DNA of 64,000 nucleotides from Guillardia theta CCMP2712. Taxonomy: Eukaryota > Protista > Cryptophyta. The position numbers and the translations under genes are program-made. The DNA is taken from NCBI RefSeq assembly GCF_000315625.1, contig NW_005434608.1, positions 254,018 to 318,017 of the forward strand, in the 5' to 3' direction. Under the pieces are notes generated by a model that saw only the letters and a program-made list of their open reading frames with translations, did no database searches and was not told the origin of the DNA. Positions 130-2,670 of this stretch are shown here, one piece after another (position 1 is the stretch's first letter; the number at the start of each line of letters is the position of its first letter).

Positions 130-1080
130 CACCCTCTCTCGCCAGCATGCTCTCCAGTACGGGATCGACCCTGCCCGTCTTGTGCTGTGGGAGGTGAAGA
201 AAGGGGAAAGCCTTAGCCGCTTCCTCCTCTTTGCCGACCTCCTCCTCGACTCCCCTGCCCACTCCATTGATCCCTGGCAGATCCTTGAGGTACCTCCTCC
301 CTCCCCACTCAGCATGAGGTCACTGACTGCTTCCTGCAGAGTCTTCAAGCTCGATGCCCAGTGCTCTCCCTGCCCGGGCAGCAGCTGTACCAGAGGAGCA
401 CTGCTGCCATCCTGCGCTCGCTGTCACTTGACGACGTGTTCTTGGGTGAGGACAGACTGAGTGGAGATGGCACGTTGTATATCTTCATGATCATCATTCT
501 TCCTCCTCCTCCTCCTCCTCCTCCTCCTCTGCTGCTGATGCATCTTCGTCTCCTCCTCCTCCTCCTCCTCCTCCTCCTCCTCCTCCTCCTCCTCTAATAG
601 TGCTTCTCCTCCACTTCTGCCCTTCTCCCTCAGTCTTCCTTGTGACTGTTTTCCTCCTCCTCGTCCGTCGCTGCAGCGAGAGACCTCTTGGACTACGAGC
701 AGCTGGCCGTCAGGCTTGCCACCCACCCGGGGGCCATCAGGTGAAGTTCCTTGATGAGCATGCTGGACGTTGAGACTGAGGCAGGAGGACAAAGTCAGAC
801 CTCTCCGGTGTGATAGATTCGCAGAGAAATCAAAATTTCTCTCCTCCTCCTCTCGCTCCATCTTCTCGTTCTCCTGTGGCTCCTCGGCTCCTTCCAGGTT
901 GAGGCTCCGACTCCTCCGTGCTCCCTCTGAAGAATCCATCCGACAGGAAACAGTCTCGATCTCGCCGGCGGGGTCAGACTGCTTGAAGTCGCTTTCAAGA
1001 CCCTCTGGGACTTGCATCACAACGACGTGCTCCCTCGTCCTGCCCTCCCGGAGGAGACAGGCCTTCGTCGTCCTTACAAG
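130..1080 (-). CDS. Exon-like fragments of a hypothetical protein; a separate gene or a 3' extension of the NASP-like gene
   Basis: Long minus ORF 424..1119 and coding-like sequence at 130-470, separated by a (GAG)n tract; no recognisable domain; splicing unresolved. Confidence 0.3.
500..594. repeat. (CCT)n microsatellite
   Basis: Direct reading. Confidence 0.9.
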
Positions 1081-1100
1081 AGATTTCACGTCGTCGTCCA

Positions 1101-2047
1101 TCAGTTGTGAAGCGCACAAGCTTCACGGTCAAGCTTGTCCTGCAGCTCTTGCAAGCGCTCCTTGCCCTCGGCTATCTCCCTCGCGTCTTCGCTGAACAGG
1201 TTGTATCTGATCTTCAAGCACCTCTTCATACACTTCACCGCACTCACTATCCTCGCTCGCTCCTTCTCCCACTGCACATCCACCGTCCTCGACCAAGGGC
1301 TCATGATCCACTTTGACATCTCCACAAACACCTCGGCCAGCAGCTTGTCGTCCTTGCCCTTCCTCTCCAGCACCTCTCTCGCCTGCTTCAGCGCCGTCCA
1401 CGCGCTCTGCATGGGGTTGAAGCAATCGTCGTCAGAGCCGTCGGAGTCAGCGGAGGCGTCCTTGTTGACGTAGGAGGAGTTGGCGTCGGAGAAGTTGGAC
1501 AGCACCTCCTTCTCGTACAACGATCGAGACAGCATGAGCACGGCTCGCACGCACTCCACCGAGTCTTCCTCAAAGTTGTCTATTTTCTCCTCGATCGCCA
1601 CCGTCAGCAGGTCCACAGCATCGTCGTACCTTCCTTCCTCGAACGCAGTTTCTGCGAACCCTATGCACTGATCGGCCGTCATGACGTCGTCGTGCGGGAG
1701 GACCCTCTTCTCATCCTGCATATTCTCACCCTCCTCCGCCTCCTCCTCCTCCTCCTCTGCTTCTGAAACATTGCATGCTCGCTTCAGATCATCTATGTGA
1801 ACGCGTGGGACGGGAACATCCGCTCCTATGCCCCCTCTCAGCTGCAGCAGGCAGCGTGCAGAAGACCTGGGGGGACTCAGTAGGAGGGAGTATGACAGAG
1901 CAGACTATGGGCTCACCTGATATTGAGGATACCCCATCTCCCTCCTCTGTTCACCTCCCCGTGGGTCTTCTTCAGCTGAGGATCAACCAAACCGCAGGCT
2001 ATGGCCACGAGCCAAGAGACGAGGATGAAGTACTTGACGGACGGCAT
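1101..2047 (-). CDS. NASP/Sim3/Hif1-like (SHNi-TPR) histone chaperone with signal peptide and LRGG leader
   Basis: Exon 1 2047-1917, 50-nt GT-AG intron 1916-1867, exon 2 in frame with ORF 1101..1721. Translation MPSVKYFILVSWLVAIACG...LLQLRGG...; TPR helices YDDAVDLLTVAIE..DSVECV..acidic insert..MQSAWTALKQAREVL resemble the interrupted TPR of NASP. 3' end uncertain. Confidence 0.6.
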
Positions 2048-2319
2048 GCTCTGATCGGCTCAGATCCCGGGCATCTGCCGACATGTGGTTCAGGCCGAGG
2101 AAACATCTCCCCCTATCAGCATCCTTCTCTCACACAGACATACAGCATCCTAACCTCCTCATGCAGCATGTGATACATCTCGTTGGGATCTTGCGCTACA
2201 CATACGCGCCCCTCCTCTCCTTCCTAACTGACTCTCTTCCCTCCTCTCCCGCAGGCCTTTGAGGCAGGCTTGTGAGGCAGCCGCCTTCAAGTGGCCGCGA
2301 TGATGAGTAGTCACGCATG

Positions 2320-2670
2320 ATTGGACCGTGCCCGGCCGCCCCGCCCGGCCCCTCGGAGCCGGGCCTCAGGCCGGGCCCGGGGCTCATCCTCTCAGTCCCC
2401 CCCCCGCCGGTGGGCCGGGCCGGACTCCGGTCCGGGTCACGAGTGACACACCGTGGCGCAGTGCCGCACCGGGCCGCGGGGGGCCGGGGGATCGGACCGC
2501 CGGACCGGACTCATGATTCGCAATGAGAGAGTCGCTGTGTACAGTGCCCCCCGCCGAAGGAGTGTATTCCGAGAGCGGCTGAGTGCCTCCCGCCCCCCGC
2601 GACTCAGTCCCGGCGGGCCGCCAGCGCCCGGCCGCCGCCAGCCCCGGCATCGAATCACTGAGGCGGACTT
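2320..2670. promoter_or_regulatory. CCGG/GGCC-rich non-coding island between divergent genes
   Basis: Very GC-rich with many CCGG and ACTCA/TGAGT words; shares TCACTGAGGCGGAC with the island at 21043-21290. Confidence 0.5.

What the first reader, a model, noticed from the sequence alone, without database searches (positions are those of the whole stretch)
1101..2047. Histone-chaperone-like TPR protein with an ER signal peptide: candidate nucleomorph-targeted NASP
Seen: an exon missed by the ORF track encodes MPSVKYFILVSWLVAIACG-LVD.., then a basic stretch, then an acidic linker and NASP/Sim3-like TPRs. Known: NASP-family proteins are H3-H4 chaperones without signal peptides; in cryptophytes, signal + transit leaders lacking a +1 aromatic residue route proteins to the periplastid compartment that houses the nucleomorph. 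Inference: a host-encoded chromatin factor serving the endosymbiont nucleus.
Basis: partly seen in the sequence, partly recalled or inferred. Interest (0 to 1): 0.7.

Follow-up and report, generated by a model that had tools for sequence, protein, structure and literature searches.

The report
Short NASP-like protein with periplastid leader
A nuclear gene of the alga Guillardia theta makes a shortened relative of the histone H3-H4 chaperone NASP behind an import leader of the kind that sends proteins into the remnant endosymbiont cytoplasm holding the nucleomorph, so it is a plausible but untested host-supplied chromatin helper for that relict nucleus.

Summary
On the minus strand, exon 1 (2047..1917), a 50-nt GT-AG intron (1916..1867) and exon 2 (1866..1101) give a 298-codon frame. 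RNA-derived contigs from three studies carry exactly this splice. The public model starts only at the internal Met (1721).

The leader has a hydrophobic signal-like start and a net-basic spacer, and it ends in LQLRGG. The six G. theta proteins listed as localised to the periplastid compartment by GFP fusion all end their leaders in the same LRGG box. This scan had already noted that box many times on other DNA of this genome.

The mature 242-aa acidic protein belongs to a small family, probably cryptophyte-only, in which every member carries such a leader. A family profile hits solved NASPs first (AtNASP E 7.5e-6, human sNASP about 1e-3). The AlphaFold model shows TPR2 split by an acidic loop and matches sNASP best.

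It is not a textbook NASP. It has three TPRs rather than four, it has no Pfam SHNi-TPR hit, and the residues that bind the H3 alpha3 helix are mostly absent.

G. theta also has an apparently leaderless canonical NASP (C154) and a second, fuller NASP gene whose first reading frame looks like a leader (C44). Periplastid targeting is likely. Histone chaperoning for the nucleomorph is inference.

The parts
2048..2184 (-). 5' untranslated region as far as RNA contigs reach. It holds out-of-frame upstream ATGs at 2106 and 2084 and an in-frame TGA 12 nt before the start codon.
   Evidence: The contig of X1 reaches 2184. ORF list and sequence.
1917..2047 (-). Coding exon 1 (131 nt, phase 2). It encodes the signal-peptide-like start and the first part of the transit-peptide-like spacer.
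   Evidence: Orthologue leader.
1991..2047 (-). Residues 1-19, the putative ER signal peptide: n-region MPSVK, a hydrophobic core (mean Kyte-Doolittle 2.7 over 11 residues) and A-C-G at -3..-1. The next residue is Leu (Cys if the cut follows AIA).
   Evidence: (hydropathy) and reading. SignalP was not available.
1867..1916 (-). 50-nt GT-AG intron.
   Evidence: Joint seen in contigs of three runs from three studies. Sequence.
1101..1866 (-). Coding exon 2 including the stop (1103..1101). It encodes the end of the leader and the whole mature protein.
1830..1850 (-). LLQLRGG, the ubiquitin-tail-like box that ends the leader. It is the probable processing site.
   Evidence: The same box occurs in Hanusia and in all family members and in 6 of 6 G. 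theta proteins listed as GFP-localised to the periplastid compartment.
1725..1763 (-). Acidic linker EAEEEEEEAEEGE at the N-terminal end of the mature protein.
1719..1721 (-). Internal Met, the start of the public 206-aa model. A Met stands just before the TPR domain in all listed relatives (nine codons nearer the domain than in Guillardia and Hanusia) and is probably the ancestral start codon.
1107..1676 (-). NASP-like TPR domain: three TPRs plus a terminal helix (P0001 residues 16-205).
   Evidence: AlphaFold model with pLDDT 81. PDB profile hits. Foldseek and VIA-align results.
1416..1472 (-). Disordered acidic and Ser-rich loop that interrupts TPR2 (P0001 residues 84-102). This is the SHNi-type hallmark.
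1398..1400 (-). Trp of the A-W motif in helix B of TPR2. It aligns with human sNASP W180 of the H3 alphaN-binding E177/W180/D181 triad and is kept in 12 of 13 family members.
   Evidence: Residue roles from PMC9122598.
608..1100 (-). 3' untranslated region. The 231-aa low-complexity ORF at 424..1119 overlaps it and is probably not a gene.
   Evidence: Contigs run on to 605-610. ORF list.

Best explanation
This is an expressed two-exon nuclear gene of Guillardia theta for a 298-residue precursor. Shown: the exon structure and the splice, the family-wide build (hydrophobic N-terminus, variable spacer, LRGG-type box, acidic/Ser linker, Met, TPR domain), and the profile and fold similarity to NASP. 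Inferred: the first ~19 residues act as an ER signal peptide. The remaining net-basic stretch of about 37 residues has no aromatic residue after the signal cut and ends in LQLRGG, so it would carry the protein across the periplastid membrane and leave it in the periplastid compartment, where the leader is probably removed at the LRGG box. The mature protein is 242 residues, 27.7 kDa and pI 4.5. It is a shortened NASP derivative: TPR1, a TPR2 split by an acidic loop, TPR3 and a terminal helix. It most likely holds basic clients. The best candidates are the H3 and H4 histones that the nucleomorph encodes and that are translated in the periplastid compartment, handled alongside the nucleomorph-encoded Asf1 and Hira. 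It may be small enough to enter the nucleomorph without a classical NLS.
For: Gene model: (splice in three studies; one contig spans 2184..608).

Leader conserved as a feature but not in sequence: Hanusia P0002 and ten metagenome or SRA-assembly relatives, all with a hydrophobic N-terminus and an xRG[GA] box. In L007 and L008 the leader and domain lie in one open frame.

Periplastid hallmark: starch-synthase-like ugg-t, EF-1alpha, 14-3-3, RRM1, CyP and Ubc8 of G. theta are all listed as GFP-localised to the compartment. All six end their leaders in (L)RLRGG or LRGG just before the mature part (PMC12136025, Appendix S3). The rule that a leader without an aromatic +1 residue retains the protein there, and a nucleus-encoded H2A shown in the nucleomorph, come from PMC5443833.

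NASP link: the four best PDB hits of the family profile are all NASP (7w5m 7.5e-6; 7v6p, 7v1m, 7v1k about 1e-3), against 0.066 for the next family. Foldseek ranks 1-5 are NASP. The top three VIA-align rows are sNASP at Z 16.3-16.9 with the highest identity, 20-21%. The language-model neighbours shown are SHNi-TPR clusters or clusters so named. The family HMM hits the exons of both G. theta NASP genes in colinear order.

Need: no NASP was found among nucleomorph-encoded proteins, while Asf1 and Hira are reported there.
Against: There is no Pfam SHNi-TPR hit for this protein, and only 1 of 9 relatives reaches E 0.11. It has three TPRs, not four. Its last helix lies where sNASP has TPR4 helix A, so the long helix that builds the H3 alpha3 groove and the dimer is missing. 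Of the alphaN triad only the Trp is kept across the family. Generic TPR proteins (LGN, KLC, TONSOKU) score within about 1.5 Z of NASP. No signal-peptide or ASAFind predictor could be run. Upstream out-of-frame ATGs and the conserved internal Met leave room for a leaderless isoform. No localisation or histone-binding data exist. I saw no NLS.
Confidence: 0.55

Rival explanations
1. It is a periplastid TPR adaptor or co-chaperone that descends from NASP but no longer handles histones. It might escort other basic proteins or act in import or protein quality control. The fuller NASP at C44 would then do the histone work.
For: TPR4 and the capping/dimer helix are lost, and the H3 alpha3-contact residues are mostly absent. 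A second NASP gene with a Pfam SHNi-TPR hit, whose first reading frame looks like a leader, exists at C44. Sequence is only 23-31% identical across the family.
Against: The acidic split of TPR2, the acidic N-terminal tail and the conserved Trp of the alphaN site are retained, which fits a client that is basic and histone-like.
Confidence: 0.25
2. It is an ER-lumenal or secreted TPR protein. The N-terminus is an ordinary secretory signal and the protein never crosses the periplastid membrane.
For: A hydrophobic N-terminus alone does not separate secretory from periplastid proteins, and no predictor was run. One relative (P0017) reads FFAPS after its hydrophobic start, so leader details vary.
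Against: A spacer of about 37 residues with net positive charge ends in LRGG, the box found in 6 of 6 G. theta proteins listed as GFP-localised to the periplastid compartment. A NASP-type acidic cytosolic or nuclear fold has no known role in the ER.
Confidence: 0.08
3. The similarity to NASP is generic TPR resemblance. The family is an unrelated three-TPR protein whose loop happens to be acidic.
For: There is no Pfam SHNi-TPR hit. Structural scores of LGN, KLC and CHIP are close to those of NASP. The Atlas shape search gave only generic TPR clusters.
Against: NASP entries take the first four places in a sequence-profile search, about four orders of magnitude ahead of the next family, with the loop at the same place in TPR2. 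Independent language-model neighbours are SHNi-TPR clusters. The family HMM gives colinear hits to both G. theta NASP genes.
Confidence: 0.12

Closest known systems
NASP / SHNi-TPR family (human sNASP 7v6p, 7v1k; Arabidopsis NASP 7w5m; Sim3, Hif1)
   Same: Both have TPR1, a TPR2 interrupted by an acidic disordered loop, the A-W motif at the start of TPR2 helix B, a C-L-x-I/L motif in TPR3 helix B and an overall acidic charge. NASP gives the best profile and fold matches.
   Different: This protein has three TPRs instead of four. It lacks the long TPR4B/capping helix, I saw no C-terminal NLS, and it has no Pfam PF10516 hit. It carries an N-terminal bipartite leader. The mature part is about 240 aa, against 385-790 aa.
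G. theta SHNi-TPR gene whose first frame looks like a leader, at G000:C44 (locus L002, minus strand)
   Same: It is in the same genome. Its first reading frame holds a hydrophobic signal-like start, a Ser/Arg/Leu-rich spacer and LLLRGG just before TPR1. TPR1-3 are colinear with this family.
   Different: It keeps a Pfam SHNi-TPR hit (25.7 bits) and a long Glu-rich insert in TPR2, so it is closer to canonical NASP.
G. theta canonical NASP at G000:C154 (locus L001)
   Same: The TPR exons are colinear with this family. It carries the LQLAWE motif, and SHNi-TPR scores 35.2 bits.
   Different: No hydrophobic leader appears in the first readable exon, and it has a fourth TPR and a long C-terminal helix. 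It is presumably the host nuclear NASP.
[quoted passage not shown] 2017, PMC5443833)
   Same: It is a host-encoded chromatin protein with a signal peptide plus a transit-like leader lacking an aromatic +1 residue.
   Different: H2A was localised to the nucleomorph by antibody. This protein has no localisation data and is a putative chaperone, not a histone.

Membership tests
NASP / SHNi-TPR | Pfam PF10516 (SHNi-TPR) match at or above the curated cut-off | tested here: not met
   No PF10516 hit for exon 2 even at E<=10. Among 9 family members only one reaches E 0.11. Both other G. theta NASP genes pass.
NASP / SHNi-TPR | TPR2 interrupted by an acidic stretch | tested here: met
   The model has helix 55-83, a disordered acidic/Ser loop 84-102 and helix 103-121. 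The loop aligns with the NASP insert in 7w5m and 7v6p.
NASP / SHNi-TPR | Four TPRs followed by a capping helix | tested here: not met
   There are seven main helices, meaning three TPRs plus one terminal helix. The terminal helix overlies sNASP up to residue ~263, which is TPR4 helix A (helix limits from PMC9122598).
NASP / SHNi-TPR | Significant sequence-profile similarity to solved NASPs | tested here: met
   Family profile A3: 7w5m E 7.5e-6; 7v6p 8.8e-4; 7v1m 1.1e-3; 7v1k 2e-3. The next family (KLC) scores 0.066.
NASP / SHNi-TPR | H3 alphaN-binding triad (human E177, W180, D181; Xenopus Q-W-D) | tested here: inconclusive
   The Trp is kept in 12 of 13 members. G. theta and Hanusia have Q-S-A-W-T, so Gln sits at the E177 place, as in the Xenopus NASP.S construct, and the Asp is replaced. 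Other members lack the E/Q.
NASP / SHNi-TPR | H3 alpha3-binding residues (R242, E246, Y249, L253 in TPR4A; L306 in the capping helix) | tested here: not met
   By position, R-E-I-A-E in G. theta matches R242 and E246 only. Y249 and L253 fall on Glu, the other family members differ, and no equivalent of the L306 helix exists.
NASP / SHNi-TPR | Binding of H3-H4 | not testable with these tools
   Needs pull-down or ITC with nucleomorph and host histones.
Cryptophyte periplastid-targeted proteins (bipartite leader) | N-terminal ER signal peptide | tested here: inconclusive
   Heuristics fit: a basic n-region, a hydrophobic core with mean Kyte-Doolittle 2.7 and A-x-G before the likely cut. All relatives have such a core (1.9-3.6). 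SignalP and TargetP were not available.
Cryptophyte periplastid-targeted proteins (bipartite leader) | Transit-peptide-like stretch whose first residue is not aromatic | tested here: met
   The residue after either plausible cut is Leu20 or Cys18. The stretch has net positive charge. The rule is as stated in PMC5443833.
Cryptophyte periplastid-targeted proteins (bipartite leader) | Leader ends in an LRGG-type box, as in the reference proteins listed as GFP-localised | tested here: met
   LQLRGG at 1830..1847. The box is present in 6 of 6 G. theta reference proteins and in all family members. The cryptophyte plastid reference file holds only 3 occurrences of LRGG.
Cryptophyte periplastid-targeted proteins (bipartite leader) | Localisation in the periplastid compartment or nucleomorph | not testable with these tools
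   Needs GFP fusion or immunolocalisation.

The most novel reading that the evidence does not exclude
Cryptophytes evolved a lineage-specific, three-TPR NASP derivative as a dedicated escort for the divergent nucleomorph-encoded H3-H4. It would work with the nucleomorph's own Asf1 and Hira, next to a second, fuller periplastid NASP. It would be delivered by a leader whose ubiquitin-tail LRGG ending is cut by a ubiquitin-type protease of the import machinery.
Probability: 0.3. Interest if true: 0.6.

Novelty: new variant of a known kind. Interest (0 to 1): 0.45.

Why it matters
The nucleomorph keeps genes for H2B, H3, H4, Asf1 and Hira but, as far as published surveys show, none for NASP. How its histone supply is buffered is therefore unknown. 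A host-encoded NASP-like protein carrying a periplastid-type leader (probably two, counting C44) would give a concrete handle on how the host controls chromatin of an enslaved nucleus. It also corrects a public gene model that starts 92 codons too late and so hides the targeting signal. A naturally minimised NASP, with three TPRs and no dimer helix, could also show which parts of NASP are enough for histone holding.

Tried and rejected
1. Pfam on exon 2 alone gave only weak TPR_2 and a chance Toxin_trans hit.
2. The first AlphaFold run, on a two-sequence alignment, was unusable (pLDDT 49). The 13-sequence run was good.
3. The Atlas shape search gave only generic bacterial and eukaryotic TPR clusters.
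4. hhalign of the family against single NASP exons gave the right places but weak scores.
5. I tried to find the published nucleomorph H2A gene to compare leaders. Only H2A, H2A.Z-like and one intron-split variant frame turned up, without a readable first exon, so I dropped this and used the published periplastid reference set instead.
6. No synteny was found between the G. theta locus and the metagenomic homologue contig L006.
7. Gould et al. 2006 (MBE) is not held in the library.
8. No paper holds NASP together with cryptophyte, or LRGG together with periplastid.
9. The taxon of the metagenomic relatives rests on one neighbouring gene only. Its best named hit is G. theta at 50% identity, against 38% or less for other named taxa.
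10. The spliced 298-aa protein was never joined or searched as one piece. All searches used exon 1 and exon 2 by reference, and exon 2 holds the whole mature protein.

Full report
**Gene model**

On the minus strand, an ATG at 2047 opens a frame that starts MPSVKYFILVSWLVAIACGLVD. An in-frame TGA lies 12 nt upstream, so the frame cannot start earlier (read). The frame meets a consensus donor (CAG|GTGAGC) after 131 nt. Fifty bases further on, an acceptor (CCCCAG|G) restores the frame of the long ORF that ends at 1101. This gives 43 codons, one split Arg codon and 254 codons, or 298 residues.

Contigs of three runs from three studies skip exactly these 50 bases. One 1527-nt contig covers 2184..608, which is the 5' UTR, both exons and about 490 nt of 3' UTR. 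These runs are only guessed to be RNA, but a precise GT-AG deletion in a contig shows that it comes from spliced RNA. The public protein (P0001, 206 aa) begins at the internal Met at 1721 and so lacks the leader.

Exon 2 by reference contains the last 12 leader residues and the entire mature protein.

**Organism**

The assembly has 87.1 Mb in 669 contigs. A protein named as Guillardia theta by UniRef and MMETSP (P0049) maps exon by exon at 80-93% identity, the shortfall coming from exon edges. The closest relative of the gene is from Hanusia phi. Earlier notes of this scan name G. theta. This organism has a nucleomorph.

**The leader**

Residues 1-19 have a basic n-region, a hydrophobic core (mean Kyte-Doolittle 2.7 over 11 residues) and A-C-G before the likely cut. 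The next residue is Leu, or Cys if the cut follows AIA. The following stretch of about 37 residues is net basic and ends in LLQLRGG.

The Hanusia orthologue comes from a transcriptome and is 73% identical in the mature part. Its leader differs in sequence but keeps VAIAC in the hydrophobic core and LRLRGG at the end.

An exhaustive HMMER scan found seven further real clusters at 50% identity. Two other long proteins in that list matched only in short repeated stretches and I set them aside. A word search added three more proteins. All of these come from metagenomes or SRA assemblies. Every one has a hydrophobic N-terminus, a variable spacer, an (L)R(L/G)(L)RG(G/A) box, a Ser/acid-rich linker, a Met and then the TPR domain. 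In two genomic contigs the leader and domain lie in a single open frame.

The Met just before the domain in all the relatives looks like the ancestral start codon, with the leader added upstream of it. In Guillardia and Hanusia the corresponding Met lies nine codons further upstream.

**Why this points to the periplastid compartment**

I found the box in the family alignment and then looked for it in the ASAFind 2.0 supplement (PMC12136025). Its Appendix S3 prints the full sequences of the G. theta proteins listed there as localised to the periplastid compartment by GFP fusion (Gould et al. 2006). The six are starch-synthase-like ugg-t, EF-1alpha, 14-3-3, RRM1, cyclophilin and Ubc8. All six carry LRGG, five of them as RLRGG, at the end of the leader. 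In EF-1alpha and 14-3-3 it sits directly before the recognisable mature protein.

By my own estimate, chance expectation for LRGG in a 100-residue leader is about 0.3%. The cryptophyte plastid reference file holds only three occurrences of LRGG.

After that I queried the scan's notebook. 63 notes on other DNA of this genome already describe the LRGG-ended leader as a periplastid hallmark, and some estimate 160-200 such genes. I confirm the 6-of-6 statement but claim no priority for the motif. No paper in the searchable library pairs LRGG with periplastid or RLRGG with cryptophyte.

The rule that a leader without an aromatic +1 residue keeps a protein in the periplastid compartment comes from PMC5443833, as does the precedent of a host-encoded H2A shown in the nucleomorph.

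**The mature protein**

From Ile57 the protein has 242 residues, 27.7 kDa and pI 4.5, with 58 acidic and 32 basic residues. With a 13-sequence alignment, AlphaFold gives pLDDT 81 and pTM 0.76. The model has these elements:

- helices 16-28 and 32-50 (TPR1)
- helix 55-83, a disordered acidic loop 84-102, then helix 103-121 (a split TPR2)
- helices 125-139 and 154-175 with a short insert between them (TPR3)
- a terminal helix 181-205

**The link to NASP**

- Pfam does not see SHNi-TPR in this protein.
- Alone, the protein hits 7w5m (Arabidopsis NASP) at E 0.027.
- With the nine-member family profile, the first four PDB hits are all NASP: 7w5m at 7.5e-6, and human sNASP 7v6p, 7v1m and 7v1k at about 1e-3. 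Kinesin light chain follows at 0.066. The alignments run through the acidic insert into the A-W helix and TPR3.
- Foldseek ranks 1-5 are NASP.
- VIA-align puts three sNASP entries on top (Z 16.3-16.9, 20-21% identity). However, TONSOKU, LGN and KLC follow within about 1.5 Z, so the fold alone is not decisive.
- The language-model neighbours shown for a family member are SHNi-TPR clusters or clusters so named.
- The family HMM hits the exons of both G. theta NASP genes in colinear order: TPR1, TPR2A, TPR2B and TPR3B.

I take descent from NASP as likely, at about 0.8.

**Where it departs from NASP**

NASP is defined by four TPRs, an interrupted TPR2, a capping helix and a C-terminal NLS (PMC4082323, PMC9122598). 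This protein has three TPRs. Its last helix overlies sNASP TPR4 helix A. The long helix that forms the dimer and half of the H3 alpha3 groove is absent.

Of the alpha3 contacts R242, E246, Y249, L253 and L306, only the first two have positional matches (R-E-I-A-E), and only in Guillardia. Of the alphaN triad E177/W180/D181, the Trp is kept in 12 of 13 members. Guillardia and Hanusia have Gln at the E177 place, as the Xenopus NASP.S construct does. I saw no NLS.

Histone binding is therefore plausible, given the acidic tail, the acidic loop and the conserved Trp, but it is not assured.

**Context in the genome**

A whole-genome scan with PF10516 found two other loci.

- **C154 (L001):** this encodes a canonical NASP with LQLAWE, SHNi-TPR at 35 bits and a fourth TPR. 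Its first readable exon shows no hydrophobic leader.
- **C44 (L002):** this encodes a fuller NASP with SHNi-TPR at 25.7 bits and a long Glu-rich insert. Its first reading frame holds a hydrophobic signal-like start, a Ser/Arg/Leu/Pro-rich spacer and LLLRGG immediately before TPR1. Note s1-430665 of this scan, not yet followed up, probably refers to it.

So the alga probably sends two NASP-type proteins into the endosymbiont remnant. The C44 protein is the better candidate for the orthodox H3-H4 chaperone.

**Taxon range**

No named organism other than Guillardia and Hanusia appears in the family. One homologue contig (L006) carries a carnosine N-methyltransferase gene whose best named hit is G. 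theta: 50% identity and 327 bits, against 38% or less and about 135 bits for other named taxa. This fits other cryptophytes, but it is a single line of evidence.

Published surveys report nucleomorph-encoded Asf1 and Hira but no NASP.

**Verdict**

| Claim | Status | My estimate |
|---|---|---|
| Exon 1, splice and leader-plus-TPR build | confirmed | – |
| Periplastid targeting | likely | about 0.8 |
| NASP ancestry | likely | about 0.8 |
| Role as H3-H4 chaperone for the nucleomorph | reasonable but unproven | about 0.45 |

This is a new, shortened variant of a known family that uses a targeting route already known for other chromatin proteins. It also corrects a public gene model.

Noticed in passing
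L002 = G000:C44:258673-261744, minus strand; first reading frame at L002 2645..2310: This is a second NASP gene in G. theta, closer to canonical NASP. Its first reading frame has a hydrophobic signal-like start, a Ser/Arg/Leu-rich spacer and LLLRGG directly before TPR1. Later exons carry TPR2A, a long Glu-rich insert, the AWE helix and a Pfam SHNi-TPR hit. It is probably the orthodox periplastid or nucleomorph NASP. Its splicing was not checked with RNA.
   Followed up: partly
L001 = G000:C154:62872-65964, minus strand: Canonical NASP gene with LQLAWE, SHNi-TPR at 35 bits, a fourth TPR and a long C-terminal helix. No hydrophobic leader appears in its first readable exon.
   Followed up: partly
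window 1830-1850 and family leaders (P0002-P0010, P0041-P0043): The leader ends in a copy of ubiquitin's tail (LRGG or LRLRGG). The same box ends the leaders of all six G. theta proteins listed as GFP-localised to the periplastid compartment, and occurs in two Thalassiosira candidates in the ASAFind 2.0 supplement. The scan has noted this motif many times elsewhere in this genome.
   Followed up: yes
window 1719-1721 and the matching place in all relatives: A Met is kept just before the TPR domain in the metagenomic relatives (M-V-x-R-D-D-I); in Guillardia and Hanusia it lies nine codons further upstream. It looks like the ancestral start codon, but it could also allow a leaderless isoform. 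Out-of-frame upstream ATGs at 2106 and 2084 lie in the 5' UTR.
   Followed up: no
window 424-1119, minus strand: A 231-aa ORF with poly-Glu and poly-Arg runs lies inside the 3' UTR of this gene's transcript. It is probably not coding.
   Followed up: no
window 2320-2640: A very G+C-rich stretch with imperfect inverted repeats (20-24 nt arms, 75-80% complementary) lies just upstream of the transcript's 5' end. A 30-nt probe from it found no second copy in the window. It may be a promoter island or an element remnant.
   Followed up: partly
P0017 (metagenomic relative), residues 1-20: This relative reads MAVCIAVGVFFAPS at its start, resembling the aromatic plastid-type motif, yet it still carries the LRGLRGA box. 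Its N-terminus may be incomplete, or its targeting may differ.
   Followed up: no
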